From contig NW_020843606.1 in assembly GCF_003704095.1 (NCBI RefSeq), positions 186,001 through 250,000 of the forward strand: a stretch of 64,000 nt of DNA. Direction: 5' to 3'. The notes under the pieces were generated by a model. It was not told the origin of the DNA and did not search any database. It saw only the letters and a list, made by a program, of their open reading frames with translations. The stretch comes from Pocillopora damicornis. Its lineage: Eukaryota. The translations under genes were made by a program, and so were the position numbers. Below, piece by piece: positions 5,401-38,495 of this stretch (its first letter is position 1; each line of letters opens with the position of its first letter).

Positions 5401-7297
5401 ATTTCTCTATAATCCTCCGTTAAAATCACTTTGTTCATTGCGTTAGTTTAAACTTAAGATGTTAAAGGAGGTGTATAAAAAATAAATAACGTCGCGTTTC
5501 TTGAAATTATTGTTTTTTTCTCTGGCTTTTCTACTGGTGGGCAAAATAAGAAACGGGTAAGCTGTTGTAGGTTATTAACCTATTGGATTCATGTTTATTG
5601 TGTAAGTATCTGTAGCAGGCAGTGTAATGTCTCTAACGTTATGTATCATTAGAGTCATTCTTTTTGTCTTTGAGAAAGATGGTCCCAGAAAGTTCCTTGA
5701 TTCTGATCTCATTAGTAATGGAGCACTTGCGAAGAAGCCTTTGAAAGAAACTCTCTTCTTAGGTAGGAACTACTGAAAAGGAGGCATGATATAGTAATTC
5801 AGTGTTATCGTTATCGTTATCGTTGCTTCCGAAATGTACTTTAAATGTAAACACTTTATTTTGTACTTTTCAGTAATTCCAATTGTATTGTTTGGTTGTG
5901 TGATCATTGCTGGTCTGTTATGCTTCTGCTGTCGGCACAGGTGGGTAACAAGAGGAGTAGACATAACGGGGCTCGTAAGATAAAATTGCTGGACTGAAAC
6001 AACATGGAAGGGAGGGTATCTGAGAAATTGCACACCCTCCCCTCCGTTAACCCAACATTGGCCCTAACTTGTTATCAGTTTACTTTTATTGGGTTAGGGG
6101 CGGGGGAGGTGCGCAATTGCTCTGATAATAACGCTGATCCACAGATTATCACAAAGAAATATGTTACACATACGAACGTGGGATCCAAAAAAAAGATGAG
6201 GATTCCAGCCCCAGCCAGTTTTGATTTCATCTTCCCATACTCTATCACTGGGCTACTGTGAATTTGTTGGAGAAACAACCCATCTAAAGGGTTCGGAAGT
6301 ATTTGGTTGATTTAAATTTAGAAAGGGGTGGTTTTGTGTCAGAAATTTATGATGAAATTATGTTTAGTTAGAAGTGTATATGTTAGAAGTATATGTTAGT
6401 GTTGATATGATGTATAGTATACAGAATGCAAATGAGAAGGTGGAGAAGTGTAAAAATGATGATGCGACAGATGTTGATGTTTGGTCGCGTTATGAGTTGA
6501 ATTGTTAATGGTTGTAATTGAGTGTCCTTTAACATTGCTGAGAGTTGCGTGAACAAACGTATTTTTTGCTTCTATGTCTGCCCCGTCACATGTCTATCGA
6601 TTGGCTAACCTTGACATCTCTGTAGATCTCTCTGCGAAACGTTAAACGAGAGTTATTTGTATCTCAGACCTAAGAGAGCACGTCGAATAAGAGAGAAGAA
6701 AGAAAAGAAAGAGAAAGAAGCACAGCATCAAACAGAGGCCAAACTTGGAATTGATAATGAGATAGTCTATGAGCAACCACCTCCCTATGAATTTCAAACT
6801 GTCTCCCTTGACTTTAACAACGACATGGAAGATGGTGGGTTTCCGAACGATAACTCCGCCCAGCTGGAGAAGCCTGTTTTTACTGACGATAACAAGGTAA
6901 TCAGAACATTAACTTCGCAGAAATTTTCTCGGAAATCCTCTCGTCTGAATAGAATTATCACAAGAGCAATGAAAACAAAAATTACATTACTCGAAGGTGG
7001 CCATTTAAAATTTAAAATACGCCGCGACGTCTGGAACTAGAAAAATTTTATAAGGGGTATGGGTATGGCGGAGAGACTCTGATATTCCCGAAAGATGTAA
7101 TCGCATTTTTGCATCAACTGACAATTTTATAAGTTTTTTCTGTTCCTTTATTGATTAAATTTGGAAGTATTCTGGCTGGTGATTTAACCTAAGAAAGGAG
7201 ACACTCTCGTTCTCCAAGAATATTATCACTAACCATTTTTTTATTTGCCATCTTTCAGTTCTTCTCTTTTGAACGGAACGCTATTGATTATTCTTAA
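2432..7297 (+). CDS. Discoidin (F5/8 type C) domain single-pass type I membrane protein, 8 exons (approx. 2432-2516, 3481-3690, 4023-4165, 4619-4754, 5679-5762, 5874-5940, 6668-6896, 7259-7297)
   Basis: Signal peptide MDFLLKGNTLILIIFTMALLLTPWTDA. FA58C motifs GCPNEEELG..IPDKYMTSSS, GWCAS..DPYIQI, SNDSKDWTFY and YIRIYP..CMRIALYGC. TM segment VIPIVLFGCVIIAGLLCFCC followed by a basic stop-transfer run. GT-AG junctions with compatible phases. Confidence 0.85.
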
Positions 7298-7703
7298 GCT
7301 GAAACTACAGTGGGNNNNNNNNNNNNNNNNNNNNNNNNNNNNNNNNNNNNNNNNNNNNNNNNNNNNNNNNNNNNNNNNNNNNNNNNNNNNNNNNNNNNNN
7401 NNNNNNNNNNNNNNTCTTGTACTGAAGTGAGACTCCTTTGCCCAATTTGGAATGCTGGTAAACGTAAGAAAACGGAGAGAGCTTTCCCGAGAAAGGCCGC
7501 ACGAGATTATGTGTATGTCACGGGGTGCGATGTGAGGCAACAATATAATTCGTGAATATTTGCGAAGAAAAGAAATTTAAGTTACTTCATCACACATGAT
7601 GTTGGCCTTAGTTGCAAGAACAATTGCAAATGATTCCAGTGTTGACTGTCAGAGTAACCTTGAATATGACAAACTTATAAAACTTTGATGTCAATTAAGA
7701 TAA

Positions 7704-7873
7704 TTCCCGGAAATGAAAACAACCACTTCCTGTTTTCTGGGAAAAGCTTCAAGGCTGATTAACCGATACGGGAAAGTCCCTTATGAGCTGTTTTTGCATG
7801 ACGGAAAAGGATGTGGCGCTTTCTGATTCGCTACAAAACTTTTCAGATTTAAAAGGTCAGCTTTATATTTATA
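7704..7873 (+). promoter_or_regulatory. Proximal promoter of TMEM121-like gene A with GAS, IRF-like, ETS, GAS, NF-kB and TATA-like motifs
   Basis: TTCCCGGAA 7704-7712; GGAAATGAAAAC 7709-7720; ACTTCCTG 7725-7732; TTCTGGGAA 7735-7743; GGGAAAGTCCC 7770-7780 (reverse complement GGGACTTTCCC); TATATTTATA 7864-7873; ATG at 7926. Confidence 0.55.
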
Positions 7874-7925
7874 GCAGTCAGAACTTTTTGCTTACAAACC
7901 TCCTGGCCCTTCGATCTCGCTGATT

Positions 7926-8909
7926 ATGGCTCGTTGTCCGTTTGAATTGACACTGAAGAACACAGGACGGATTGCATTTGGCGTTATCTTGGTAATTCAA
8001 GCAATTTTCCTCGCTTTCTATCCTGGCGAGTATGAAAATTCTAAATGGTACAGTTTATTAACAGTTTTCCTCCCAGCACTTGGTGCGTGGTCTTTGCTGT
8101 TATGTTTGCAGAAAGCCACACTTCGTTGGCTGTTATTAGTCTGGAGTCTCTACATTGCTGCTTTGATAGTGAATATCGGGATCATTTTTGGATTGGTTGG
8201 AGACAAACTTGGCACCAAGAAGTTCCCGAGCTTGGGTCTCTTAAAGGGAATTCTATGCCTCACGCCTCCTCTGTTATTACTGTTGCTACACAATGCAGAT
8301 GACCTGGATCGATCTCAAGAACGCAAAGATTTAGTGTTCAAGCTGTCTTTTCAAATGGCCATCGATCTGTTCGATGTTATTGACATGATTGACATTGTTT
8401 TGGATGACATAGGACGTGCGAATGAAGCTCAGAGCCTACCTGCAGATGTTATAGCCACATTAAACAAAACCCTTAAGGGGACTCTACCAAGCTTCACACT
8501 CAACACCACAGGTATATTAACCTCGGAATTAAACAAAAGCCTTGCAATACCTCCAGTATTTGGTAGAGTGATGATAGGAGTCGCATGTTTCAGTCTCATG
8601 TTGTCTATATGGCAATGGGCTGAAAACAAGCTCTCCACGACTGACACGGGGATTCAATTTCGAACAGCAGTTGCACGCAACGTTCTAGAAGTGATCTTCG
8701 TCAATTTCTTTTTCTTGGTCATCCGTGGAGTGGTTTTTTTTAGGTACAGCCAAGACGACTTTGTTTTTATAGCCAAGAATTTTATCGCAATAATTTTTTC
8801 AATTTTGGAAATTCACGCTCTTTGTCAATCGCATTCAACCACGTTTGTAAGTCTATGTAAAGTGGAATGGCAAAAATGTTCTGCGCGACTCAGAGAGTTC
8901 AAAGGGTGA
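7926..8909 (+). CDS. TMEM121/CECR6-like multipass membrane protein, subfamily A (intronless, 327 aa)
   Basis: About 7 hydrophobic segments. Family-like motifs LCLTPPLLLLLL, IDLFDVIDM, VNFFFLVIR and FIAKN. Confidence 0.8.
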   Translation: MARCPFELTLKNTGRIAFGVILVIQAIFLAFYPGEYENSKWYSLLTVFLPALGAWSLLLCLQKATLRWLLLVWSLYIAALIVNIGIIFGLVGDKLGTKKFPSLGLLKGILCLTPPLLLLLLHNADDLDRSQERKDLVFKLSFQMAIDLFDVIDMIDIVLDDIGRANEAQSLPADVIATLNKTLKGTLPSFTLNTTGILTSELNKSLAIPPVFGRVMIGVACFSLMLSIWQWAENKLSTTDTGIQFRTAVARNVLEVIFVNFFFLVIRGVVFFRYSQDDFVFIAKNFIAIIFSILEIHALCQSHSTTFVSLCKVEWQKCSARLREFKG

Positions 8910-9153
8910 CTGAAATGATGTATAACTCGCAGATAATGATTTAACCGAATCACAATTATTTTATAAGAATTAATAAGTGTAGGAAAAAACACTTCTCGGC
9001 GCCGTTCAAACATTTTTTTGGTATAACAACATGTGATGATTACAAACTTTCATAGTCCATATTGGTAATAAAAATCAATTATTGTGGTTTAGTTTTATTA
9101 CTGTTGTTCACTTTAGATAACGTAGTAAGTTGATTCGCTGTCTATGATTATAT

Positions 9154-9320
9154 TTGGAAGTATTCTGGCTGGTGGTTTAAACCTACGCCTACTTCAAGAA
9201 CTTATATGCATTCTGCAAGAAGAAATAGAGAATATCTATACTATCCATTTTTTTAATTATTTGCCATCTTCCAGTTCTTCTCTTTTGAACGGAACTACTT
9301 AAGCTGAAACTACGGTGGGA
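9154..9320 (+). repeat. Duplicate of the last intron end and last exon of the discoidin gene (copy of ~7159-7314)
   Basis: Shared TTTGGAAGTATTCTGGCTGGTG and TTATTTGCCATCTT.CAGTTCTTCTCTTTTGAACGGAAC...TTAAGCTGAAACTAC. Confidence 0.8.
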
Positions 9321-9880: not shown

Positions 9881-10334
9881 GTTGTTGCTTTTGAGTACTG
9901 GAACAGATTCCAACAGCTACAGAGATCAAATCTGGCAGATATCCCTACGAATGGCTCTGGATCTCTTTGATGGAGTTGAAATGCTGGAAGTTATCATCGA
10001 AGAAAATGAAGTCAGCCATGGCGTTCCAAAGTCCTTTGAAAAAGCCATACTCGCTTTTGTCTGTATCAGTTTTATCCTCTCCCCATTGCAACTGGTTGAG
10101 ATAAAGTTAAGAAGTTCCAATAGGTGGGGATTTCTACATAGATGTAGAGAAGGTTTGCGAACAGCCCTACAGATCATCTGTGTTAATTGTGTGTTTTTGG
10201 GGCTTCGCATGTATCTATGGCGGGGCTATGGAAAAGATGCCTCTATTTTTATCGCTAAAAATGCTATTGTAATTTGCCTAGGCCTTTTCGAGGTATGTTC
10301 AATCGGTAAATGTTGTGGTTGTGACGATTATTGA
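9881..10334 (+). CDS. TMEM121-like subfamily B, C-terminal half (5' part lost in gap)
   Basis: Open frame with LDLFDGVEM, VNCVFLGLR, IFIAKN and a Cys-rich end KCCGCDDY*. Confidence 0.75.
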
Positions 10335-10509: not shown

Positions 10510-10999
10510 GAACTTGACTCGTTTTGGATTTGTTCTATGGACCAGATGTCTTGACGATGACCCTTTGCCTAACTCCGCTCCTTTTGTTGCTGTTGCTTAA
10601 CACATTTGAAACGAAAAGTAAAGACAGAGAGTTCTTATTAAAACTGGCCTTCCAAATAACATTAGATCTCTTCGACGGAATTTAAATGCTGCAAGTTTTT
10701 CTGGAGGGAAATGAACTTAGCATTCCCAAGCGCTTTAAGGCAGCTATCATTGCCTTCGTTTGCATAAGTTTTGTGCTTTCGAATTTTCAATTAGAGGAGA
10801 ACAGGATTTCAGTCTATTTACAAATACACAGCCTTCATCCGTATCACCCTTCAGATTTTACTCAGTAATTGTGAGTTTTTGGGCCTTCGTTTGGCTCTGT
10901 TCTTTAAGTTCAAGAGAGATGCGTCAATTTTCATTGCCAAAAATGGCATTTTGATCAATCATAGGATTTTGGAGATTTTTCAGTGTTGTAAGGGTTAGT
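10510..10999 (+). pseudogene. TMEM121-like subfamily C pseudogene, 5'-truncated
   Basis: Highly similar to 29901-30659. In-frame TAA after DLFDGI and later frameshifts. Confidence 0.8.
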
Positions 11000-11209: not shown

Positions 11210-11835
11210 CTATTTCCATCCTGAGCCTTAGCGCCAACCCACTTTGCGATTTTTATTGGGGAATTGTCCATTCCTTTATTTTCAGTCATGAATAAAGTCG
11301 GCTTTTCTTGTTAGTATAGGGCTTTTGTGTTTATATGATAAACAAAATAATACATGATTTTATAAATAATTGGTGGGGTGCTCTAAGTCATTTAAGTGTT
11401 TTAAAAACCTGAAAGTTTTTGTTTGATATTGCTCGAAGCAAAATATAAATCAACCGGATCCCAAATGAGCATTCTCTTCAAAACTCCAGTTTTCCTTTTC
11501 CCCCATTTTTTTTTCTTTTGTACAAAATTCATACAAACTACGGTGTTATACATCTTGAGCCTCCAGCGCCATCCCACTGTGCGTTTTTTTAAGGGAAATT
11601 GACGATTTCTTTATTTTTATTCATTAATAAAGTCGACTATTCTTGTCAGTAAAGGGCTATTGTGTTTATATGATAAACAAAATAATACAAGATTTTATAA
11701 ATAATGGGTGGGGTGCTTTAAGACATTTAGGTGTTTAAAAACCTGAAAAATTTTGTTTGATATTGCTCGAAACAAAATGTAAATCAACCGGATACTAATG
11801 AGCATCCTCTTCAATACTCCAGTTTTCCTTTTCCC
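11210..11835 (+). repeat. Tandem duplication of ~340 bp
   Basis: CATC.TGAGCCT..AGCGCCA.CCCACT...ATATGATAAACAAAATAATAC...AAATCAACCGGAT...CTCCAGTTTTCCTTTTCCC occurs twice (~11215-11505 and ~11550-11835). A related copy lies at ~26330-26420. Confidence 0.85.
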
Positions 11836-11864
11836 TAACTTTTGTCTTTTGATATTTTCTTACT

Positions 11865-12426
11865 TGGGTTAAACATGATAAAACCGAAGCAAGCCAACGC
11901 GAACATTGCTGAACTGAATGCTTTGGGTATTCCAAGGTCGTACTCTCTTCCTTCTAACACGATATGTATCATCTCGACTCTATCGAACAGATCGATGGTC
12001 ATGGGCAACCACAAATAGGAAAACAATCTCTGTTTCTTTATGATTTTCGTGTGAATCATCGAGATCGCCTGTGTTCGGCAATAGTAGTAGCAGAAGTGGT
12101 GTAATGCACAGAATCGCCTTAAATACGTTTGGACTCAAAAACTCGGTCTTGCTGATTCTATCTCCGAGCATTATTACTACCATTGCGATGTTTACAACCA
12201 AAGCCACGATATACAGACCCCAAATTCGAAACAGTCAACCAAGGTACAGCGATTTGAAATATAGACACACAATCCAAGCAACAACTGCTGAGCCGAAGGA
12301 AAAGGTTATGAAATACCAACTATATTTGCCATCATACTTCGCGAGATAAGCAGATAGAAGTATGCTCTGTATAGTTATCAGACCTAAGAAAGCCACTCTT
12401 CTGAGAAATGTTGAAAACGAAGCCAT
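11865..12426 (-). pseudogene. TMEM121-like subfamily D pseudogene
   Basis: MASFSTFLRRVAF... with an internal stop at ~12235, a frameshift near 12020 and 3' truncation. Paralog of 27155-27961. Confidence 0.8.
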
Positions 12427-12872
12427 AATATGTCTAACAGCTGTTTGAAACTAGAAGAAGCAAATTGTGTTGACTACTGCAATAGTAATTGATACTGTAC
12501 ATTTGTAAGAAAAACTTCGCAGTGAATGAGGAAACGCCTCATCTATCCTGATCAAATGATGCAAGAATGAATTACCCGAATATTCCAGAAGTTTAAATGC
12601 ACAGACTGATTGCATACGTAATTTGGTCACTGCTGAAGACTTGATATTCCTATGTAGCTTCCTTAATCAGCGATTCTGGCTTTTTATTTGTATTTGTTCA
12701 CATCTGCTTTTCTCGGAATAGATTACTCCACTGTATTGCACTTTCAAGAAAACTTTCTTGAAATCGGCGTAGAGTTTATTTCGATGCAATTATTTTAGCA
12801 GCAACTTTGTTATTGGACTTTCTTGAAGAAACGCTTATCGTAGAAAAACCTTTCAAAAAGGATATCTTTCTC

Positions 12873-15865: not shown

Positions 15866-16311
15866 GAAGTTAGGGAGTCTTGGAGCCTGGAGAGACTGAA
15901 CTGTTCAATCAAACGCGAGATCACACATTCGACAACTTTAAGTTCCTTTGCACAGTTATGTATTTTTCTAGTTTGTTTAGCATTTCACCGTTTGATTTCC
16001 AGCTCCAAGAAATGTCGTAACAAAACAAGTGAAAAAAATACCATATTTTTTTTCACGTGTATTTAATATCCTCAATCAGCTGCTGACACGTCACTGGCCT
16101 TTTGCACCACTCGGTCAGGTCAGATGAATGAACGGCAAAGCCTTCGCCATTTTCAATCCAAGGTAGTTTGTGGGAATTTCCTCGGATCATGGCGGCTAAC
16201 ACTGAAATATCNNNNNNNNNNNNNNNNNNNNNNNNNNNNNNNNNNNNNNNNNNNNNNNNNNNNNNNNNNNNNNNNNNNNNNNNNNNNNNNNNNNNNNNNN
16301 NNNNNNNNNNN

Positions 16312-16429
16312 GAGACCAAGGAGACCAAGGAGACCAAGGAGACCAAGGAGACCAAGGAGATCAAGGAGACCAAGGAGACTAAGGAGACTAGGGAGACCAA
16401 GGAGACCAAGGAGACCAAGGAGACCAAGG
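16312..16429 (+). repeat. 9-bp minisatellite (GAGACCAAG)n bounded by gaps
   Basis: About 13 visible units. Confidence 0.95.
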
Positions 16430-20532: not shown

Positions 20533-21332
20533 TTAGTAATCGTCAGAACTAGAACACTCGCAGATTGATCATATCTCAAAGAGATCAAGGCAAATGACAA
20601 TAGCATTTTTGGCAATAAAAATGGATACATCTTTCTCGTAGCCCCGCCGTAGATACATACGAAGCCCTAAAAACACGCAATTAACACAGATTATTTGTAA
20701 GGTTGTGCGCAAACCAGCTGTACATCTGCGAATTTTCCACCGTTCGGAACCTCTTATTTTTATTTCGACTAGTTGTAATGGAGACAGCAGAAAGCTGATA
20801 CAGACGAATGCAAGCACTGCTTTTTCAAAGCCTTTAGGAACGCCATGGCTGAATTAATTCTCTTCAATAATGACATCCAGCATTTCCACTCCATCGGAAA
20901 GATTCAACGCCATTCGGATGGAAAACTGACCGATCAGGTCTCGGTAGACGATGGAATTCGTTCCCGTACTTAAAAGCAACAACAGAATCAATGGGGCAAG
21001 GCAAAGTGTCGTCTTTAGAATGTTTGGACCAAAGAATTTTACTTTGTCGAGGTTATCTTCAATCGGTTCGTCACCTCTAAATATGATCACGACGAAGATT
21101 ACGAACCCAACGATATAGCACGTCCAGACAGCAAATATAATAACCACTGTAATTTCTTGTCGTCGCACATGATGTAAAGCCATAAACCAACTGTAGGTAT
21201 GAACAGGACAACCAATTCATAGAAACTATCTTTGTGTTTGTATTGTGCAGGATACGAAGCCAGCGAGGAGGCCTGGAGGCCTACTAAGACGAAGGAAAGG
21301 AGTCTGCCAACGGAGACTAAGCATGAGGCCAT
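20533..21332 (-). pseudogene. TMEM121-like subfamily B, full-length pseudogene
   Basis: Three ORF pieces (21099-21332, 20854-21183, 20569-20817) join into a full protein with one frameshift and two stops. DLFD has degraded to NLSD. Confidence 0.85.
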
Positions 21333-21777
21333 CTCTACGATAAGTGTTTCTTCAAGAAGGTCCAATAACAAAGTTGATGCTATAATAATTGCATGGAAAT
21401 GTACTTTGCGTCTAATTGAAGAACGTTTCCTAGGAAGAGCAATACAATGAAATAATCTTTTCCGAGAAAAGCGGATGTGAACAAATACGAAGAAAAAGCC
21501 AGAAGCGCTGATAGAAGAAGCTACATAGGAATGTCAAGTTTCTAGCAATGACCAAATTACGTATGCAATCAGTCTGTGCAAGTGAGCTTCTGGAAAAAGA
21601 TCACATGAAGCTATTGCAGTATTGGTTAGTGCAAAAATAGAAGTTACCTATTACGGGAAGATTTCCATCTCACGTGGTTTTGACATGTGACTTCCAAATT
21701 TAAAACGATGACACTGCAGATTTTCAACTATATAGCCTTCGACGAGAACAGCACCGTTTTAAAGAGAAAAGCAAAGC

Positions 21778-22548
21778 ATGGATTGTGGATTGGTTTTGGT
21801 CGGTCGTTTTCTTGCCGTTCTTCTTCTGTGCGTCCAATGTGGGTTCCTGACAGCTTTTCCTGTCTGTTACAGGGATGATAAACGTCTAGTATCCTTGCTA
21901 CTTTTGTCTTTTCCTGCCCTGATTTACTATGGGATTTGTCTGGCTACTGGTGGAGAACTCCGTAAAGTTTTCCGCACTTGGGGTCTCTACATTATTTTCG
22001 GTTTGATCCCTTACATCGCAATCATTTTTGCGTTGTGCGGAGACGTACTCAACAAGGACAGTTTTCTCAGCCCGACCTGTTTGAAAGTGATCCTGTGCAT
22101 CACGCCTGCTGCCTTTCTCATTCTGGTGAATACAGCGAGCGATTTGGGCAAATACGAAGACTACAAAGCCCTGGCCTTGAAGCTGTCAGTCGTAATAACA
22201 ATAGATCTTGTCGATAGCGTCGAGATGTTGGATATTGTGCTCGATGAAAGGGAGAACAGTGACGGAATCCCAAAAGAGTTTGGATATGCAATGATAGCAG
22301 CGGTGTGCTTGAGCTTTCTGTTGACTTTGCTGCAAATTGCACACATAGGAACCGTCTCTCTTCGCAAAGAAGTGGCGATTCTCGCATATGTTTTGCAGAT
22401 ATTTTTCGTGAATTTGCCTTTCATGGCAATGCGCGTGGTTGTAGTTAAAAACAACAAAAAAGACGATAATGAGTCCATCTTCATCACAAAGAATCTGATC
22501 TCCATCTTTCTCTCCGCGATGCAGATCTATTGGATCTGGAAGAGCTAA
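21778..22548 (+). CDS. TMEM121/CECR6-like protein, subfamily E (256 aa, intronless)
   Basis: Intact ORF with LCITP, IDLVDSVEM, VNLPFMAMR and IFITKN. TATA-like CTATATAG about 50 bp upstream. Confidence 0.8.
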   Translation: MDCGLVLVGRFLAVLLLCVQCGFLTAFPVCYRDDKRLVSLLLLSFPALIYYGICLATGGELRKVFRTWGLYIIFGLIPYIAIIFALCGDVLNKDSFLSPTCLKVILCITPAAFLILVNTASDLGKYEDYKALALKLSVVITIDLVDSVEMLDIVLDERENSDGIPKEFGYAMIAAVCLSFLLTLLQIAHIGTVSLRKEVAILAYVLQIFFVNLPFMAMRVVVVKNNKKDDNESIFITKNLISIFLSAMQIYWIWKS

Positions 22549-27154: not shown

Positions 27155-27961
27155 CTAAACTACTCGGTCTTCTTGTTTGGCCCGATGTAAACGGAGTAGA
27201 TTACGAATTTCCAAAATGGAAAGTACTATTGCTATGCCATTCTTGGCAATGAAGATCAACTCGTCTTTGCCAAACATAAAGAACACCACCGCACGAATAA
27301 TCAAGAATGGTAGATTTACGAAAGCTATTTGAACAATATTGCGGCATAATGCGGTACGGATACGAATTTCCGGCCCCTCTCCGGTAAGTTTGATTTCTAC
27401 CATTTGCCAAGGAGATTCCAATATACTGAGGCAAGCTAACACGATCATTGCTGTACTGAAAGCTTTGGGTATTCCAAACTCGTGCTCTCTTTCTTCTAAC
27501 ACGATATCTATCATCTCGATTCCATCGAACAGATCGACGGCCATGGGAAAACACAACTTGGAAACAATCTCTCTTTCTTCGTTGTCTGAATCATCGAGAT
27601 CGCCTGTGTTTAGCAACAGTAGTAGCAGAAGTGGTGTAATGCACAGAACCATCTTCAATACATTTGGTCCTAAAAACTCGGTCTTGTCGATTCTATCTCC
27701 GACTTTTCCAAATACCATTGCGATGTTTACAACCAAAGCCATAATATACAGGCCCCAAATTCGAAAGAGGCAACCAAGGTACAGCGCTTTGAAAATTAGA
27801 AGAAGAACCCAAACAAAAACTGCTGGGCCAAAGGAAAAGGCCATAAAATACCAATTGGATGTGCCTTCATACTTCCCGAGGTAAGCAGATAAAAACATGC
27901 TCTGTGTAGTCATCAGACAAAAGAAAGCCAATCGTCCGAGCCATATTATAAACGAAGCCAT
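27155..27961 (-). CDS. TMEM121/CECR6-like protein, subfamily D (268 aa from MASF; the ORF-track extension uses a non-ATG start)
   Basis: Intact ORF with LCITPLLLLLLL, VDLFDGIEM, VNLPFLIIR and IFIAKN. Confidence 0.82.
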   Translation of the reverse strand: MASFIIWLGRLAFFCLMTTQSMFLSAYLGKYEGTSNWYFMAFSFGPAVFVWVLLLIFKALYLGCLFRIWGLYIMALVVNIAMVFGKVGDRIDKTEFLGPNVLKMVLCITPLLLLLLLNTGDLDDSDNEEREIVSKLCFPMAVDLFDGIEMIDIVLEEREHEFGIPKAFSTAMIVLACLSILESPWQMVEIKLTGEGPEIRIRTALCRNIVQIAFVNLPFLIIRAVVFFMFGKDELIFIAKNGIAIVLSILEIRNLLRLHRAKQEDRVV

Positions 27962-28288
27962 TATTTTATGTATGAAAGCTGTCTGAAACTGGAAGAGGCA
28001 AATTGTGCTGACTAATGCAATAGGAATTGATACCGTATATTTGCATGAAAAATTAAGCAGCGAATGAAATAACGCCACAAAGATCTTGATCAAATGATGC
28101 TAAAGGGAATTACCCCAATATTTCAGAAGGTCACATGCAAAGACTGATTGCATAAGTAATTTGGTCACTGCTGGGGACTTGATATTCCNNNNNNNNNNNN
28201 NNNNNNNNNNNNNNNNNNNNNNNNNNNNNNNNNNNNNNNNNNNNNNNNNNNNNNNNNNNNNNNNNNNNNNNNNNNNNNNNNNNNNNNN

Positions 28289-28622
28289 AGAGCACGACTT
28301 TGGAATACCCAAAGCATTCAGTACAGCAATGATCGTGTTGGCTTGCCTCAGCATGTTGGTATCTCCCTGGCAAATGGCAGAAAACAAACTCACTAAAGAT
28401 GGGCCAAAAATTCGCTTCCGTACCGCATTATACCGCAGTATTGTTCAAATAGTTTTCGTTAATCTACCATTCTTGGTTATTCGTGCGGTGGTGTTCTTTA
28501 TGTTTGGCAAAGACGAGTCCATCTTCATTGCCAAGAATGGCATAGCAATAGTACTTTCCATTTTGGAAATTCGTAATCTTCTCTGTTTACGTCGGGTTGA
28601 ACAAGAAGACCAAGCAGTTTAG
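28289..28622 (+). CDS. TMEM121-like subfamily D, C-terminal part after a gap
   Basis: EHDFGIPKAFSTAM...VNLPFLVIR...IFIAKN, open to the stop. Inverted relative to 27155-27961. Confidence 0.7.
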
Positions 28623-29900: not shown

Positions 29901-30659
29901 CTAATCCTTACAACACTGAAAGATCTCCAAAATCCCATGAATGATCAAAATGCCATTCTTGGCGATGAAAATTGACGCATTTCTCTTGAACTTAAAGAAC
30001 AGAGCCAAACGAAGGCCTAAAAACACACAATTACCGAGTAAAATCTGAAGGGTGATACGAATGACGGCTAAGTACTTGTAAATAGACGTGTCCAAAAACC
30101 TGTTCTCCTCCAATTGAAAATGCGAAAGCATAAAACTTATGCAGACGAAGGCAATGATAGCGTTCTCAAAGCTCCTGGGAATGCTAACTTCACTTTCCTC
30201 CAGAATAACTTGCAGCATTTCAATTCCGTCGAAGAGATCTAATGTTATTTGGAAGGCCAGCTTTAATACGAGCTCTCTGCCTTTACTTTCTATTTCAAAT
30301 GTGTTAAGCAACAGCAGCAAAAGGAGCGGTGTTAGGCAAAGGGTCATGGTCAAGACATCTGGTCCAAAGAACAAATCCTTCTCGATTTTTTCTTTGATTC
30401 GCCCAAATATTACTCCAATTATGGGCACTAAAGCAAGCCATACGTACAGACCCCAAACGGAAAATACCCAGGTGATGAGCTTTTCATTGCACACGACGAG
30501 AAACCAGAGAATCAAGGATGGGATGTAGAGAAGAAGTAAAGCATACCAGCCATTTTGATTTTCGTAGCGTGCTGGATACGAAGCGAAGGAGATATACTGA
30601 AGGATCATCACGATGAAGAAGGCAGTACGTGCAACCCAAGCCAACAGCGAATGAGTCAT
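29901..30659 (-). CDS. TMEM121/CECR6-like protein, subfamily C (252 aa from MTHSLL)
   Basis: Intact ORF with LCLTPLLLLLLL, LDLFDGIEM, GNCVFLGLR and IFIAKN. Confidence 0.82.
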   Translation of the reverse strand: MTHSLLAWVARTAFFIVMILQYISFASYPARYENQNGWYALLLLYIPSLILWFLVVCNEKLITWVFSVWGLYVWLALVPIIGVIFGRIKEKIEKDLFFGPDVLTMTLCLTPLLLLLLLNTFEIESKGRELVLKLAFQITLDLFDGIEMLQVILEESEVSIPRSFENAIIAFVCISFMLSHFQLEENRFLDTSIYKYLAVIRITLQILLGNCVFLGLRLALFFKFKRNASIFIAKNGILIIHGILEIFQCCKD

Positions 30660-31572
30660 TTTGAAACTCAAATTGCTGTTGTTGCTGTTGTAGACTTAAA
30701 AGGACTGCTTATACACTGAGAAACTCCGTTCACCCCGGAATGAGGACTTCAAATTTATAATCATTCTAACGACGTGTCATTTGAACCAACTTCCTGCGTT
30801 TCTCGGAAAAAAAAGTTATCAAAGACCAACGGATTTCAAGTTTTCCTAGAAAGCCTATTGACCTTATGTACCCCATTATCAAAAATCCTTCCGTTTCTGT
30901 CACGGCAAATACCGGTAACAAAATTACTCAACTAACAAGGCCATTTGCATGTATATTATGCATCGATGTATCATTGCTCCCAAACATACATTTCAAGCCG
31001 CTTAGATCAATACAACCCCATGTTTCTTAAAGTAAAGCAGAAATGAGTTTGTCCGCCAATACAGACGGTCGTTTCTTCTACTTTCTTATTTGACGTTACT
31101 ACTACTCAACCAACAGTGTTAGTTGACAAAGAAAAGCATGCACGGATTAGATAACGGACTAAAAGGCACCCAACCTACAGTAGAACATGAAAAATAAAGC
31201 GGCTAATAACAATAAGCTGTGACTTAAATGGCAATAGCCACGATTTTTGGTACAACCTTAAGTCGCCGTTCCTCTATCTTTTTATGTAATCGACACCAAA
31301 TTGATTTCTATAACGACATTAGACATGTATGATTAACCGTTCTACGTTACCGCGCAGAAAATATTTATGCAATTTCGAAGAAAAGAATCGGCTTTAATTT
31401 TGTGAATCAACTTTAGCGCCCTGCAAGAGGACCTCAAAACCGAAAAAAAAATCATACTTTAAAATGATTCAAAAAAGGGGGGGAAAGACAAGACATTAGT
31501 TTTTATTACATCCATTTTGGATGTAATAAATATCTGGTGTTCCTTGAAATCTGACTGGTTCCCATTGGTGCG

Positions 31573-37340: not shown

Positions 37341-38495
37341 ATGGCTGCCTTGGAGTTCGAAGCCGCAAACAAATTCGCGCTAGATCTTCATAAATGCCTG
37401 AAAAGTACCGATAAATTTGCCGGTGAAAACCTCTTCTACTCTCCTTCAAGTTTACTGATTGCACTTGCGATGACTTCTTTCGGAACGAGGGGGAATACTG
37501 CTTTGGAACTAATGAAAGTTTTGCACGTGGATTCAGTTTCATCAGATGATTTGGGCAAGAGCATGAAGAACTTCATCGATAGCTTGAATAGGGCAAGTGA
37601 TGAAAACAACAAGCTTCTGATAGCTAACCGACTCTTCGTGCAAAAGAGCTTCGAAATCCTGTCGTCCTTTCAACAAGGAATGCGAGAGTTCTACCGCGCT
37701 GAAATCGCTTTGGTAGACTACATTGCAAATGTCGAGAAAGCTAGAGAAGAGATCAACAAATGGGTCGAACAGCAAACAAACGATAAGATTAAAGATCTTA
37801 TTCCTGCAGGAATGCTGGGTTCGGATACCAGGCTGACTCTGGTGAACGCGATCTACTTCAAAAGTGTGTGGCAAGAGAAGTTCAAAAAAGAAGACACGTT
37901 CACAGGGTCATTCTTCCCGTCACAAAAAGAAGAAATGAAAGTGGAAATGATGTGCCAAGAAGGTGATTTTAAGTTTGTGGAGTCAAAGGATCTGGCTTGT
38001 CAAATTCTTGAAATGCCATACCTGGGTAATAAATTGTCTATGGTAATCTTTCTTCCCGTGGAAATTGATGGTCTGGCCAAGCTGGAAAACAGGATCACTT
38101 ATGAGACTCTTCAGCAGTCACTATCCCTGCTTAATGGTTCAATGGGTGAAGTTGAAGTCATTTTGCCTAAATTTAAGCTGACTCAGCAGTTTGACCTCAA
38201 CAACGTGTTGGCAAAGATGGGAGCAGAAGAGATGTTTATTCCTGGAAAGGCTGACCTGTCTGGTATCTCAAGTGAGCCACTGTGTGTTTCAAAGATTGTG
38301 CACAAGGCATTTGTCGAGGTGGATGAAGAAGGCACCGAAGCAGCTGCTGCTACTGCTATTGGTGTGGCTCTAATGAGTATGCCTTTGCCGAAGCCAATGT
38401 TCAAAGCTGATCACCCTTTCCTGTTCATTATAAGACAAAATGAATCAGGAGCCATTCTGTTCCTTGGTCGGCTTATGAAACCAAGTCTTGAATAA
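37341..38495 (+). CDS. Intracellular inhibitory serpin (SERPINB/leukocyte elastase inhibitor-like), single exon, 384 aa
   Basis: NLFYSP, LVNAIYFK, hinge EEGTEAAAATA and FKADHPFLF. No signal peptide. Confidence 0.95.
   Translation: MAALEFEAANKFALDLHKCLKSTDKFAGENLFYSPSSLLIALAMTSFGTRGNTALELMKVLHVDSVSSDDLGKSMKNFIDSLNRASDENNKLLIANRLFVQKSFEILSSFQQGMREFYRAEIALVDYIANVEKAREEINKWVEQQTNDKIKDLIPAGMLGSDTRLTLVNAIYFKSVWQEKFKKEDTFTGSFFPSQKEEMKVEMMCQEGDFKFVESKDLACQILEMPYLGNKLSMVIFLPVEIDGLAKLENRITYETLQQSLSLLNGSMGEVEVILPKFKLTQQFDLNNVLAKMGAEEMFIPGKADLSGISSEPLCVSKIVHKAFVEVDEEGTEAAAATAIGVALMSMPLPKPMFKADHPFLFIIRQNESGAILFLGRLMKPSLE

What the first reader, a model, noticed from the sequence alone, without database searches (positions are those of the whole stretch)
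7704..7780. Compact STAT-IRF-ETS-STAT-NF-kB module in front of TMEM121-like gene A
Within 77 bp and about 150-220 bp upstream of the ATG lie a perfect GAS (TTCCCGGAA), an overlapping GAAA-T-GAAA IRF-like site, an ETS core ACTTCCTG, a second GAS (TTCTGGGAA) and the canonical kB site GGGACTTTCC(C) on the minus strand, then a TATA-like box. This resembles a vertebrate cytokine- or interferon-inducible enhancer. Cnidarians encode NF-kB, STAT and IRF. Inducibility is an inference.
Basis: partly seen in the sequence, partly recalled or inferred. Interest (0 to 1): 0.78.

Follow-up and report, generated by a model that had tools for sequence, protein, structure and literature searches.

The report
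Conserved ETS/STAT/NF-kB-type coral promoter
The five motifs are really there in front of an expressed coral membrane-protein gene, but only three of them (an ETS-type, one STAT-type and the NF-kB-type site) are kept across related corals, so this is a plausible, still untested, promoter switch and not a demonstrated interferon-style enhancer.

Summary
The genome is probably Pocillopora damicornis (inferred from assembly size). As a bare cluster it is weak: about 10 such kB + 2 GAS + ETS clusters are expected by chance in this genome.

The real evidence is comparative. In 16 orthologous promoters from at least four pocilloporid lineages, including Stylophora pistillata:
- the ETS core, the second GAS (TTCTRGGAA) and the 11-bp kB site keep sequence and spacing (6 substitutions in 30 columns against 0.65 per column; block permutation P = 0.00015);
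- the "perfect" first GAS is among the least conserved stretches (kept in 9/16);
- the GAAA-T-GAAA is not a canonical IRF site and is kept in 6/16.

GAS-type palindromes are also specifically enriched upstream of the other TMEM121-like paralogs in the window (P = 2.7e-4 without gene A). The genome encodes one Rel-homology protein and four IRFs; STAT was seen only as weak exon hits.

The TSS is unresolved, because RNA contigs overlap the module. Binding and inducibility are untested.

Earlier unchecked notes of this scan report conserved STAT-type sites upstream of other genes of this genome (ZNFX1, TRIM-NHL, MOV10/HEPN).

Verdict: a new member of a known kind, of moderate interest.

The parts
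7636..7925 (+). Conserved proximal promoter / 5' leader block of TMEM121-like gene A
   Evidence: Alignable in all 16 orthologous loci including Stylophora pistillata. Identity to Stylophora is 0.76-0.84 here against 0.44 further upstream and 0.56 in the 3' flank. Single copy in the genome.
7704..7712 (.). GAS1, TTCCCGGAA (STAT-type palindrome), not conserved
   Evidence: Present. 10 parsimony steps in 9 columns. Kept as TTCNNNGAA in 9/16 orthologs, lost in L002 and in the L004/L010/L027/L028/L033/L036 clade.
7710..7718 (+). GAAATGAAA, 'IRF-like', non-canonical and not conserved
   Evidence: 1-nt spacer, so no GAAANNGAAA match here. Exact string kept in 6/16. 6 steps in 9 columns.
7716..7732 (-). 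ETS-type footprint; minus-strand CAGGAAGTGG, core GGAAGT at 7725-7730
   Evidence: ACTTCC is invariant in 16/16. The 15-nt run AAAACAACCACTTCC is invariant in the first 12 loci and changed at 1-2 bases in L033, L035 and L036.
7735..7743 (.). GAS2, TTCTGGGAA (TTCTAGGAA in all other taxa), conserved STAT-type palindrome
   Evidence: TTCNNNGAA kept in 16/16. 1 step in 9 columns, block permutation P = 0.0185 alone.
7770..7780 (-). kB-type 11-mer GGGAAAGTCCC (minus strand GGGACTTTCCC)
   Evidence: Identical in 14/16. L010 has GGGAAAATCCC, which still fits the consensus; L035 has GGGAAAGTACC, which is broken. 2 steps in 11 columns, P = 0.023 alone. A related element sits at the homologous place in paralog g27961 and in the 55%-identity homolog L029, where it is one base longer.
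7791..7804 (+). TTTTTGCATGACGG: octamer-like TTTGCAT overlapping a TGACG bZIP half-site
   Evidence: TTTGCAT present in 12/12 first loci, lost in L035. TGACG is the part shared with L029. Not above background (P = 0.27).
7811..7834 (+). ATGTGGCG...GATTCGCTA core-promoter block shared with paralog promoters
   Evidence: Largely invariant in orthologs. Recognisable upstream of g27961 and of three genes in L029.
7843..7849 (+). Initiator-like TCAGATT (candidate TSS, inferred only)
   Evidence: CAGATT is invariant in the first 10 loci; in the 16-locus set only AGAT stays without change. It fits YYANWYY, and no upstream ATG follows it. No read evidence for a start here.
7863..7875 (+). TATA-like TTTATATTTATAG
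   Evidence: Present but poorly conserved; degenerate in Stylophora and L009.
7926..8909 (+). Intronless gene A, 327 aa, CECR6/TMEM121 family
   Evidence: Pfam PF14997, E 2.8e-21. Orthologs at 80-98% aa identity. Contigs from four polyA RNA libraries cover the CDS. About 38 extra residues in a loop relative to paralog g27961.
9067..9072 (+). AATAAA polyadenylation signal of gene A
   Evidence: The only AATAAA/ATTAAA in 8907-9300. RNA contigs of X2, X4 and X12 end at 9034-9089.
12710..12718 (.). TTCTCGGAA, GAS-type site 163 bp upstream of the TMEM121-like N-terminal fragment g12873
   Evidence: Fragment homology to g27961: E 7e-12.
21460..21468 (.). TTCCGAGAA, GAS-type site 318 bp upstream of paralog 21778-22548
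30800..30851 (.). Pair of GAS-type sites (TTCTCGGAA, TTCCTAGAA; 43 bp apart) 141-192 bp upstream of paralog 29901-30659 (minus strand)

Best explanation
The 77-bp interval is part of the conserved proximal promoter (7636-7925) of an expressed, intronless, pocilloporid-specific CECR6/TMEM121-family gene.

Three of the five sites are elements under selection, held at fixed spacing: an ETS-type site (CAGGAAGTGG on the minus strand), one GAS-type palindrome (TTCTRGGAA) and an 11-bp kB-type site (GGGAAAGTCCC, two 5-bp GGGRN half-sites around one central base).

The most likely mechanism is combinatorial activation of transcription by three factors:
- an ETS-family factor;
- a reader of TTCN3GAA, with the single cnidarian STAT as the obvious candidate;
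- the single p50-like NF-kB of the coral.

These would act about 65-200 bp upstream of a start site that lies somewhere between the kB site and the ATG.

The upstream 'perfect' GAS1 is an ancestral but dispensable second STAT-type site. The GAAA-T-GAAA is most likely not a functional IRF element.

Shown here: presence, conservation, fixed spacing, expression of the gene, presence of the RHD and IRF genes, and recurrence of GAS-type sites at paralog promoters. Inferred: which proteins bind, and any stimulus dependence.
For: - Motifs are at the stated coordinates; the gene is PF14997.
- The promoter is single copy in the genome, so it is not a repeat.
- 16 orthologous promoters were compared. 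ETS + GAS2 + kB take 6 parsimony steps in 30 columns against a mean of 0.654 per column; random placement of blocks of the same size gives P = 0.00015. GAS2 alone gives 0.0185 and kB alone 0.023.
- Positions relative to the ATG are constant (-201, -191, -155), with no indels between the sites in 12 loci.
- In pairwise comparisons the module is as conserved as the CDS (0.84 against 0.85 to Stylophora; 0.89-0.91 against 0.90-0.91 to three other loci). Neighbouring promoter DNA is at 0.76-0.84 and the 3' flank at 0.56-0.75.
- The one kB substitution in L010 keeps the consensus.
- TTCYNRGAA occurs 6 times in 2.3 kb of cluster promoters against 9 times in the other 60 kb (P = 1.7e-6; without gene A, 2.2e-4). 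It is the top-ranked of all 64 palindromic half-site triplets, with and without gene A.
- TTCTCGGAA occurs 4 times in the window against 0.56 expected, three of them in paralog promoters.
- The genome encodes one RHD gene, and collinear weak STAT_bind exon hits lie on one contig.
- Sea-anemone NF-kB has a human-p50-like DNA specificity (PMC5700166). Nematostella has one STAT and five IRFs, and part of its cGAMP response depends on NF-kB (PMC8713801).
- The gene is present in 4 of 4 polyA RNA libraries, with a 3' end at the AATAAA signal.
Against: - Synonymous divergence is low (4-fold identity to Stylophora 0.81; 0.89-0.91 to the other groups), so much of the conservation could be lack of time.
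- The 16 loci represent only about four lineages of one coral family.
- The 77-bp module as a whole is not exceptional (rank 54 of 210).
- One ortholog (L035) has a broken kB site.
- In the 55%-identity homolog the kB-like element is one base longer, which does not fit a standard Rel dimer site.
- RNA contigs run through the module in three of four libraries, so the TSS is not fixed and part of the block may be transcribed.
- Canonical TMEM121 genes elsewhere in the genome, and the upstream neighbours of the gene A orthologs, carry no GAS site.
- STAT was not detected at significant level in the six-frame search.
- There are no binding or induction data of any kind.
Confidence: 0.58

Rival explanations
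1. A chance cluster of GGAA/TTCC-rich short motifs in slowly evolving DNA. The promoter is real, but the named sites are not bound by STAT, NF-kB or ETS factors, and their conservation reflects the low divergence within Pocilloporidae.
For: - About 10 such clusters are expected by chance per genome.
- 4-fold-site identity (0.81-0.91) is about equal to module identity (0.84-0.91).
- Two of the five sites are clearly not conserved.
Against: - The three sites are much better kept than the surrounding promoter columns in the same alignment (P = 0.00015).
- Spacing is indel-free.
- There is an independent, motif-specific enrichment of TTCYNRGAA at paralog promoters that are not alignable to promoter A.
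Confidence: 0.2
2. One reading: all five sites work together as a STAT-IRF-ETS-STAT-NF-kB enhancer that makes the gene inducible by cytokine-, interferon-like or PAMP signalling.
For: - All five strings are present in this genome.
- GAS1 is ancestral: present in Stylophora, L009, L034, L035 and most Pocillopora loci.
- RHD and IRF genes are present.
- Cnidarians mount NF-kB-dependent induced responses (PMC8713801).
- Pairs of GAS-type sites 31-43 bp apart recur at paralogs and in L029.
Against: - GAS1 is lost in 7/16 and the IRF-like string in 10/16 orthologs, without loss of the gene.
- The IRF-like site has the wrong spacing.
- In Nematostella, knockdown of STAT or of single IRFs did not change cGAMP induction (PMC8713801).
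- No expression data exist for this gene under any challenge, and no paper in the library links TMEM121 to corals.
Confidence: 0.1
3. The conserved block acts at the RNA level, or is conserved because it is transcribed: as a long 5' leader of gene A, or as the 3' UTR or read-through of the paralog that lies 1 kb upstream in other Pocillopora genomes.
For: - polyA-RNA contigs cover 7442-7904 in X1, X2 and X4. In X4 a separate 357-nt contig on 7442-7798 has depth 5.9 against 18.7 for the CDS contig.
- The X2 contig continues about 1.3 kb upstream, and the letters just before 7442 match the stretch upstream of the aligned block in L002 and L007. That it reaches the upstream paralog is inferred from the layout of L007.
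- The depth downstream of the polyA site is far lower, so this is not DNA contamination.
- The NCBI Stylophora model starts 132 nt upstream of the conserved ATG.
Against: - The upstream ORF (7783-7923) is not conserved: it has stops or frameshifts in L004, L010, L027 and L028.
- There is no Rfam match.
- Two conserved upstream ATGs (7798, 7811) would burden a long leader.
- The contig from the library of organism A starts at 7918.
- Contigs cannot show transcript ends.
- Conservation comes in short blocks with motif-like content, not in a structure-like pattern.
Confidence: 0.08

Closest known systems
Vertebrate cytokine-responsive proximal promoters that combine a GAS and a kB site (for example IRF1 and ICAM1; recalled from memory, not tested here)
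   Same: A TTCN3GAA palindrome and a GGGRNNYYCC site within about 40 bp of each other, 100-200 bp upstream of the coding start, with GGAA-core (ETS-type) sites beside them.
   Different: No interferon, JAK or cytokine receptor is known in cnidarians. Binding and induction are untested. The IRF element is not canonical. The target is a lineage-specific membrane protein of unknown function.
The immunoglobulin kappa / HIV-1 LTR kB site GGGACTTTCC
   Same: The 10-mer is identical. The 11-mer GGGAAAGTCCC reads as two GGGRN half-sites around one base, the form preferred by p50-type homodimers (established knowledge). Cnidarian NF-kB has p50-like specificity (PMC5700166).
   Different: There is a single copy here, not a tandem pair. 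It sits in a coral promoter. The homologous element in a more distant homolog is one base longer.
Predicted NF-kB sites within 500 bp of start sites of Pocillopora damicornis genes (bioRxiv 10.1101/640177) and NF-kB-dependent induced genes of Nematostella (PMC8713801)
   Same: The same organism group, and the same kind of inference from a kB motif near a start site. Several NF-kB-dependent induced Nematostella genes are cnidarian-specific with no known function.
   Different: Those predictions carried no cross-species conservation test. This gene is not among the genes named in the passages of those papers that I read.
ETS-RUNX composite element (RCAGGATGTGGT; recalled from memory)
   Same: The minus strand of the 7716-7732 footprint reads CAGGAAGTGGTTG, a 10/11 match, which might explain why the footprint extends beyond the ETS core.
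   Different: The RUNX half is AGTGGT, not TGTGGT. Not tested.

Membership tests
GAS element (STAT binding site) | Palindrome TTCN3GAA (optimal TTCYNRGAA) | tested here: met
   7704-7712 and 7735-7743 both fit TTCYNRGAA.
GAS element (STAT binding site) | Kept in orthologous promoters | tested here: met
   Met for GAS2: 16/16, 1 step in 9 columns, P = 0.0185. Not met for GAS1: 9/16, 10 steps in 9 columns.
GAS element (STAT binding site) | A STAT protein is encoded by the organism | tested here: inconclusive
   PF02864 and PF01017 give no significant six-frame match. Two weak collinear STAT_bind exon hits lie on contig C1014 (E 0.03 and 0.08). Nematostella has one STAT (PMC8713801).
GAS element (STAT binding site) | Bound by tyrosine-phosphorylated STAT dimers; confers stimulus-dependent transcription | not testable with these tools
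   Needs EMSA, ChIP or a reporter assay.
kB site (Rel/NF-kB binding site) | GGGRNNYYCC 10-mer, or the 11-mer with two GGGRN half-sites | tested here: met
   GGGACTTTCC(C) on the minus strand at 7770-7780.
kB site (Rel/NF-kB binding site) | Kept in orthologous promoters | tested here: met
   14/16 identical, one variant that keeps the consensus, one broken; P = 0.023. In the 55%-identity homolog the element is one base longer.
kB site (Rel/NF-kB binding site) | A Rel-homology protein is encoded by the organism | tested here: met
   PF00554 matches on contig C998 (E 7.4e-30 and 3.1e-10).
kB site (Rel/NF-kB binding site) | Bound by NF-kB | not testable with these tools
   The protein-binding-microarray table of PMC5700166 is not held in the library.
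ISRE / IRF element | GAAANNGAAA (two GAAA repeats with a 2-nt spacer) | tested here: not met
   The spacer is 1 nt and there is no pattern match at this place.
ISRE / IRF element | Kept in orthologous promoters | tested here: not met
   The exact string is kept in 6/16; the second GAAA is lost in Stylophora, L009 and L034.
ETS binding site | GGAA/T core in a CAGGAAGT-type context | tested here: met
   CAGGAAGTGG on the minus strand at 7723-7732. GGAAGT is invariant in 16/16.
Cytokine- or interferon-inducible enhancer | Transcription rises on stimulation and needs the sites | not testable with these tools
   Only assembled contigs of unstimulated field samples were available.
TATA-box core promoter | TATAWAW 25-35 bp upstream of a mapped TSS, conserved | tested here: inconclusive
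   A TATA-like string lies at 7863-7875 but is poorly conserved. The TSS is not mapped.

The most novel reading that the evidence does not exclude
The tandem cluster of TMEM121-like genes belongs to a coral-wide set of genes switched by a STAT-type palindrome (TTCYNRGAA, often TTCTCGGAA, often in pairs 30-45 bp apart). Gene A adds a conserved p50-type NF-kB site to this. That would mark this expanded, uncharacterised membrane-protein family as an inducible immune or stress effector family in an animal without known interferon or JAK.
Probability: 0.2. Interest if true: 0.6.

Novelty: new member of a known kind. Interest (0 to 1): 0.36.

Why it matters
Very few cis-regulatory elements of reef corals have any support beyond a motif match. 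This promoter offers three short, conserved and precisely spaced sites for factors central to coral immunity and symbiosis research: NF-kB, STAT and ETS. It also offers a natural series of variants: GAS1 lost, kB broken in one lineage, kB lengthened in a distant homolog. That makes it a compact, testable substrate for asking whether coral NF-kB and STAT act together at a promoter. It also points to an expanded TMEM121-like family as a possible regulated target. It does not by itself show an interferon-like circuit.

Tried and rejected
- **Repeat or transposon origin of the module.** Rejected: single copy in the 234-Mb genome.
- **Conserved upstream ORF or N-terminal extension (7783-7923, fused in frame in the Stylophora model).** Rejected: stops or frameshifts in four loci.
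- **Known RNA family.** None found.
- **Direct alignment of paralog promoters.** They are not alignable, except for a kB-like site plus the ATGTGGCG..ATTCGCT block in g27961. The part of g27961's promoter that would hold the ETS/GAS region lies in an N stretch, which I left untouched.
- **TSS mapping.** Only Logan contigs were available, so no starts can be read.
- **Binding score of anemone NF-kB for GGGACTTTCC.** The supplementary microarray table is not held.
- **Literature on TMEM121/CECR6 in corals, or on TTCNNNGAA in cnidarians.** Nothing relevant in the library.
- **STAT gene detection by six-frame Pfam search.** Only weak exon hits. Reading ORFs of that locus gave only small exons and I did not pursue it.
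- **Error corrected.** The first parsimony analysis had its position map shifted by one base. It is superseded, whose coordinates were checked against the window sequence.
- **Octamer-like TTTGCAT.** It looked invariant in 12 loci but is not above background with 16.
- **N stretches.** The 100-N stretch at 7315-7415 and the other N runs were left as they are.

Full report
**Observation**

- TTCCCGGAA at 7704-7712.
- GAAATGAAA at 7710-7718.
- ACTTCCTG at 7725-7732.
- TTCTGGGAA at 7735-7743.
- GGGAAAGTCCC at 7770-7780 (minus strand GGGACTTTCCC).
- A TATA-like string at about 7863-7875.
- An ATG at 7926 that opens a 327-aa intronless ORF.

The ORF matches Pfam PF14997, CECR6/TMEM121 (E 2.8e-21). 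It is one of at least ten TMEM121-like genes and fragments clustered on this contig.

The genome has 234.35 Mb in 4393 contigs. The assembly size equals that published for Pocillopora damicornis (PMC6208414), and the closest named relative of the protein is from Stylophora pistillata (80% identity). I therefore take the organism to be P. damicornis or a very near relative; this is an inference.

**Is the cluster more than chance?**

- Single motifs are weak evidence. TTCNNNGAA occurs 42 times in the window against 33 expected.
- GGGRNTTYCC occurs 4 times against 1.0 expected.
- GAAANNGAAA does not match at this place at all, because the spacer here is one base.
- In 400 Markov-1 simulations of the window, a kB site with two GAS sites and a GGAAGT core within 80 bp appeared 0.0025 times per 61 kb.

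The co-occurrence is locally unusual but not significant genome-wide. The weight has to come from elsewhere.

**Conservation**

The promoter is single copy in the genome. I collected 15 orthologous loci from four kinds of source:
- Tara Pacific coral metagenomes.
- Other ENA and JGI metagenome assemblies.
- Two Logan assemblies.
- The Stylophora pistillata genome.

Their proteins are 80-98% identical to gene A. Homology to Stylophora starts near 7636 and runs to the ATG. Further upstream and in the 3' flank the sequences do not align (identity 0.44 and 0.56).

A caveat applies: synonymous divergence is low. Identity at 4-fold sites is 0.81 to Stylophora and 0.89-0.91 to the intermediate groups, so conservation alone says less than it would in faster-evolving lineages.

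Within the alignable block I counted parsimony steps per column on a tree built from the coding sequence. The first run had its position map shifted by one base. One search repeats it with checked coordinates and all 16 loci. The mean for columns 7640-7925 is 0.654 steps per column.

| Element | Steps / columns | Block-permutation P |
|---|---|---|
| ETS (7723-7732) + GAS2 + kB together | 6 / 30 | 0.00015 |
| GAS2 alone | 1 / 9 | 0.0185 |
| kB alone | 2 / 11 | 0.023 |
| ETS 10-mer alone | 3 / 10 | 0.11 |
| GAS1 | 10 / 9 | among the most variable stretches |
| IRF-like string | 6 / 9 | not computed |

Per-site retention across the 16 loci:
- The GGAAGT core of the ETS site never changes.
- TTCNNNGAA at GAS2 is kept in 16/16. 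All other taxa have TTCTAGGAA; the G in the window is derived.
- The kB 11-mer is identical in 14/16. L010 has a variant that still fits the consensus (GGGAAAATCCC) and L035 has a broken one (GGGAAAGTACC).
- GAS1 is kept in 9/16. It was lost once in L002 and once in the clade of L004, L010, L027, L028, L033 and L036.
- The exact IRF-like string is kept in 6/16.

The positions of ETS, GAS2 and kB relative to the ATG are the same in the first 12 loci, with no indel between them. The 77-bp module as a whole ranks 54th of 210 sliding windows, because its 5' third is variable.

- The run AAAACAACC just 5' of the ETS core.
- TTTTTGCAT overlapping TGACG.
- ATGTGGCG.
- GATTCGCTA.

**Paralogs and deeper homologs**

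Paralog promoters in the window are not alignable to promoter A. The exception is a kB-like GGGGTAATTCCC plus the ATGTGGCG..ATTCGCT block upstream of the gene at 27961. The region further upstream of that gene is an N stretch, which I left alone.

In a 55%-identity homolog from another coral assembly (L029), the promoter aligns only from the kB-like element downstream. That element is one base longer (GGGAAAAGTCCCC), and the ETS and GAS parts are not recognisable. This extends the age of the GGGAAA..TCCC element. It also weakens the claim that a Rel dimer reads it, since half-site spacing matters for such dimers.

GAS-type palindromes behave differently from the other motifs:
- TTCYNRGAA occurs six times in the 2.3 kb formed by the 400-bp upstream regions of six cluster genes, against nine times in the other 60 kb (P = 1.7e-6; without promoter A, four in 1.9 kb, P = 2.2e-4).
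- Of all 64 palindromes of the form XXX-YNR-xxx, TTC..GAA is by far the most enriched, with and without promoter A.
- The exact 9-mer TTCTCGGAA occurs four times in the window against 0.56 expected, three of them in paralog promoters.
- Pairs of sites 31-43 bp apart occur at gene A, at the gene at 30659 and three times in L029.
- The five canonical TMEM121 genes elsewhere in the genome, and the upstream neighbours of the gene A orthologs, have none. The feature therefore belongs to a subset of the cluster, not to the whole family.

One of the six genes (12873) is only an N-terminal fragment (E 7e-12 to a paralog). Dropping it leaves three sites in 1.5 kb, which is still well above the background rate.

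Earlier notes of this scan, which are unchecked, report conserved STAT-type sites upstream of ZNFX1, TRIM-NHL, MOV10 and HEPN genes of the same genome. I used them only as a lead for the exact 9-mer test.

**Factors**

Six-frame Pfam searches of the genome gave:
- One Rel-homology gene.
- Four IRF DNA-binding domains.
- No significant match for STAT_bind or STAT_alpha. At a loose threshold, two weak STAT_bind hits lie in the right order on one strand of contig C1014, as small exons of a STAT gene would. This is suggestive only.

From the literature:
- The DNA specificity of sea-anemone NF-kB resembles human p50 and not RelA or c-Rel (PMC5700166).
- Nematostella has one STAT and five IRFs.
- Part of its response to 2'3'-cGAMP depends on NF-kB, while knockdown of STAT or of single IRFs had no measurable effect (PMC8713801).

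The 11-mer here reads as two GGGRN half-sites around one base. By established structural knowledge, that is the form preferred by p50-type homodimers.

**Transcript**

Only assembled contigs of public runs were available, so starts cannot be read.
- Contigs from four polyA RNA libraries cover the coding sequence.
- Three of them end at 9034-9089, next to the only AATAAA (9067).
- The contig from the library of organism A starts at 7918.
- In one Tara library a contig starts at 7779, and a separate, shallower contig (5.9 against 18.7) covers 7442-7798.
- In another library a 1761-nt contig runs from about 1.3 kb upstream through to 7904. The letters just before 7442 match the stretch upstream of the aligned block in L002 and L007, so it probably reaches the paralog that lies upstream in those genomes.
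- Depth beyond the polyA site is far lower, so this upstream signal is RNA and not DNA carry-over.

The TSS therefore lies somewhere between a point upstream of 7779 and 7918, and some read-through or upstream initiation crosses the module.

Three further points bear on the start site:
- The open frame 7783-7923, which the Stylophora gene model fuses to the protein, is broken in four loci and is not a conserved coding feature.
- An initiator-like TCAGATT (7843-7849), whose CAGATT is invariant in the first ten loci, is a candidate start by sequence only.
- No Rfam family matches.

**Conclusion**

The interval is part of a real, conserved proximal promoter. Three of the five sites (ETS-type, GAS2, kB) have the marks of selected elements. 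The first GAS is ancestral but dispensable. The IRF-like site fails both the definition and the conservation test.

The most likely mechanism is combinatorial activation by an ETS factor, a reader of TTCN3GAA (probably STAT) and the p50-like NF-kB. Whether this makes the gene inducible is unknown.

The main rival is a chance cluster preserved by slow divergence. The contrast with neighbouring columns and the independent GAS enrichment at paralogs weaken it but do not exclude it.

The finding is a new member of a known kind of element. Its value lies in being a compact, testable coral promoter with natural site variants.

Noticed in passing
window 12710-12718, 21460-21468, 30800-30851; L029:4264-4304, 5592-5642, 10936-10985: STAT-type palindromes (often exactly TTCTCGGAA, often in pairs 31-43 bp apart) recur upstream of TMEM121-like paralogs here and in another coral's cluster. 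TTC-YNR-GAA is the most promoter-enriched of all 64 such palindromes in this window.
   Followed up: partly
window 7811-7834; window ~28040-28070 (minus strand); L029:2355-2397, 5910-5940, 12227-12253: A block ATGTGGCG..(C)TGATTCGCTAC is shared by otherwise unalignable promoters of several TMEM121-like paralogs. In L029 it reads CATTGGCTAC, which contains a CCAAT-box complement. It may be a family-wide core-promoter element.
   Followed up: partly
window 7152-7314 and 9145-9319: The stretch just before the 100-N run upstream of gene A is a diverged copy (71% identity) of gene A's own 3' flank. This fits a tandem duplication unit of 3' flank + promoter + gene. In other Pocillopora contigs (L002, L003, L007) another TMEM121 gene lies 1 kb upstream of the gene A ortholog, which is not seen in the window.
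   Followed up: partly
window 8420-8540 (gene A residues ~166-205): Gene A carries about 38 extra residues in a loop relative to paralog 27155-28093, with three N-x-T/S sequons (NKT, NTT, NKS).
   Followed up: no
window 37341-38495 (+): An intronless 384-aa ORF is a full-length serpin (PF00079, E 5e-121), lying next to the TMEM121-like cluster.
   Followed up: partly
window 20569-21132 (-), 10521-10814 (+), 9882-10334 (+), 28161-28622 (+), 11835-12207 (-): Several TMEM121-like copies are fragments or carry in-frame stops, and some abut N runs. The cluster holds pseudogenes as well as intact genes.
   Followed up: no
L005:2270-2340 (Stylophora pistillata, just upstream of the conserved promoter block): A short inverted-repeat-rich insert (GGGGATACACATATCAC... 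repeated in both orientations) marks the point where homology to Pocillopora ends. It is possibly a small transposon insertion.
   Followed up: no
window 6657-7040 (+): A 127-aa ORF rich in K/E/R, with a PPPYEF motif and no Pfam match, holds two TTCNNNGAA sites (6914, 6926). Part of it is similar to DNA downstream of the gene A ortholog in L004.
   Followed up: no
window ~16250-16420: A 9-bp tandem repeat between N runs reads as (ETK)n, (RPR)n or (LVS)n, depending on the frame.
   Followed up: no
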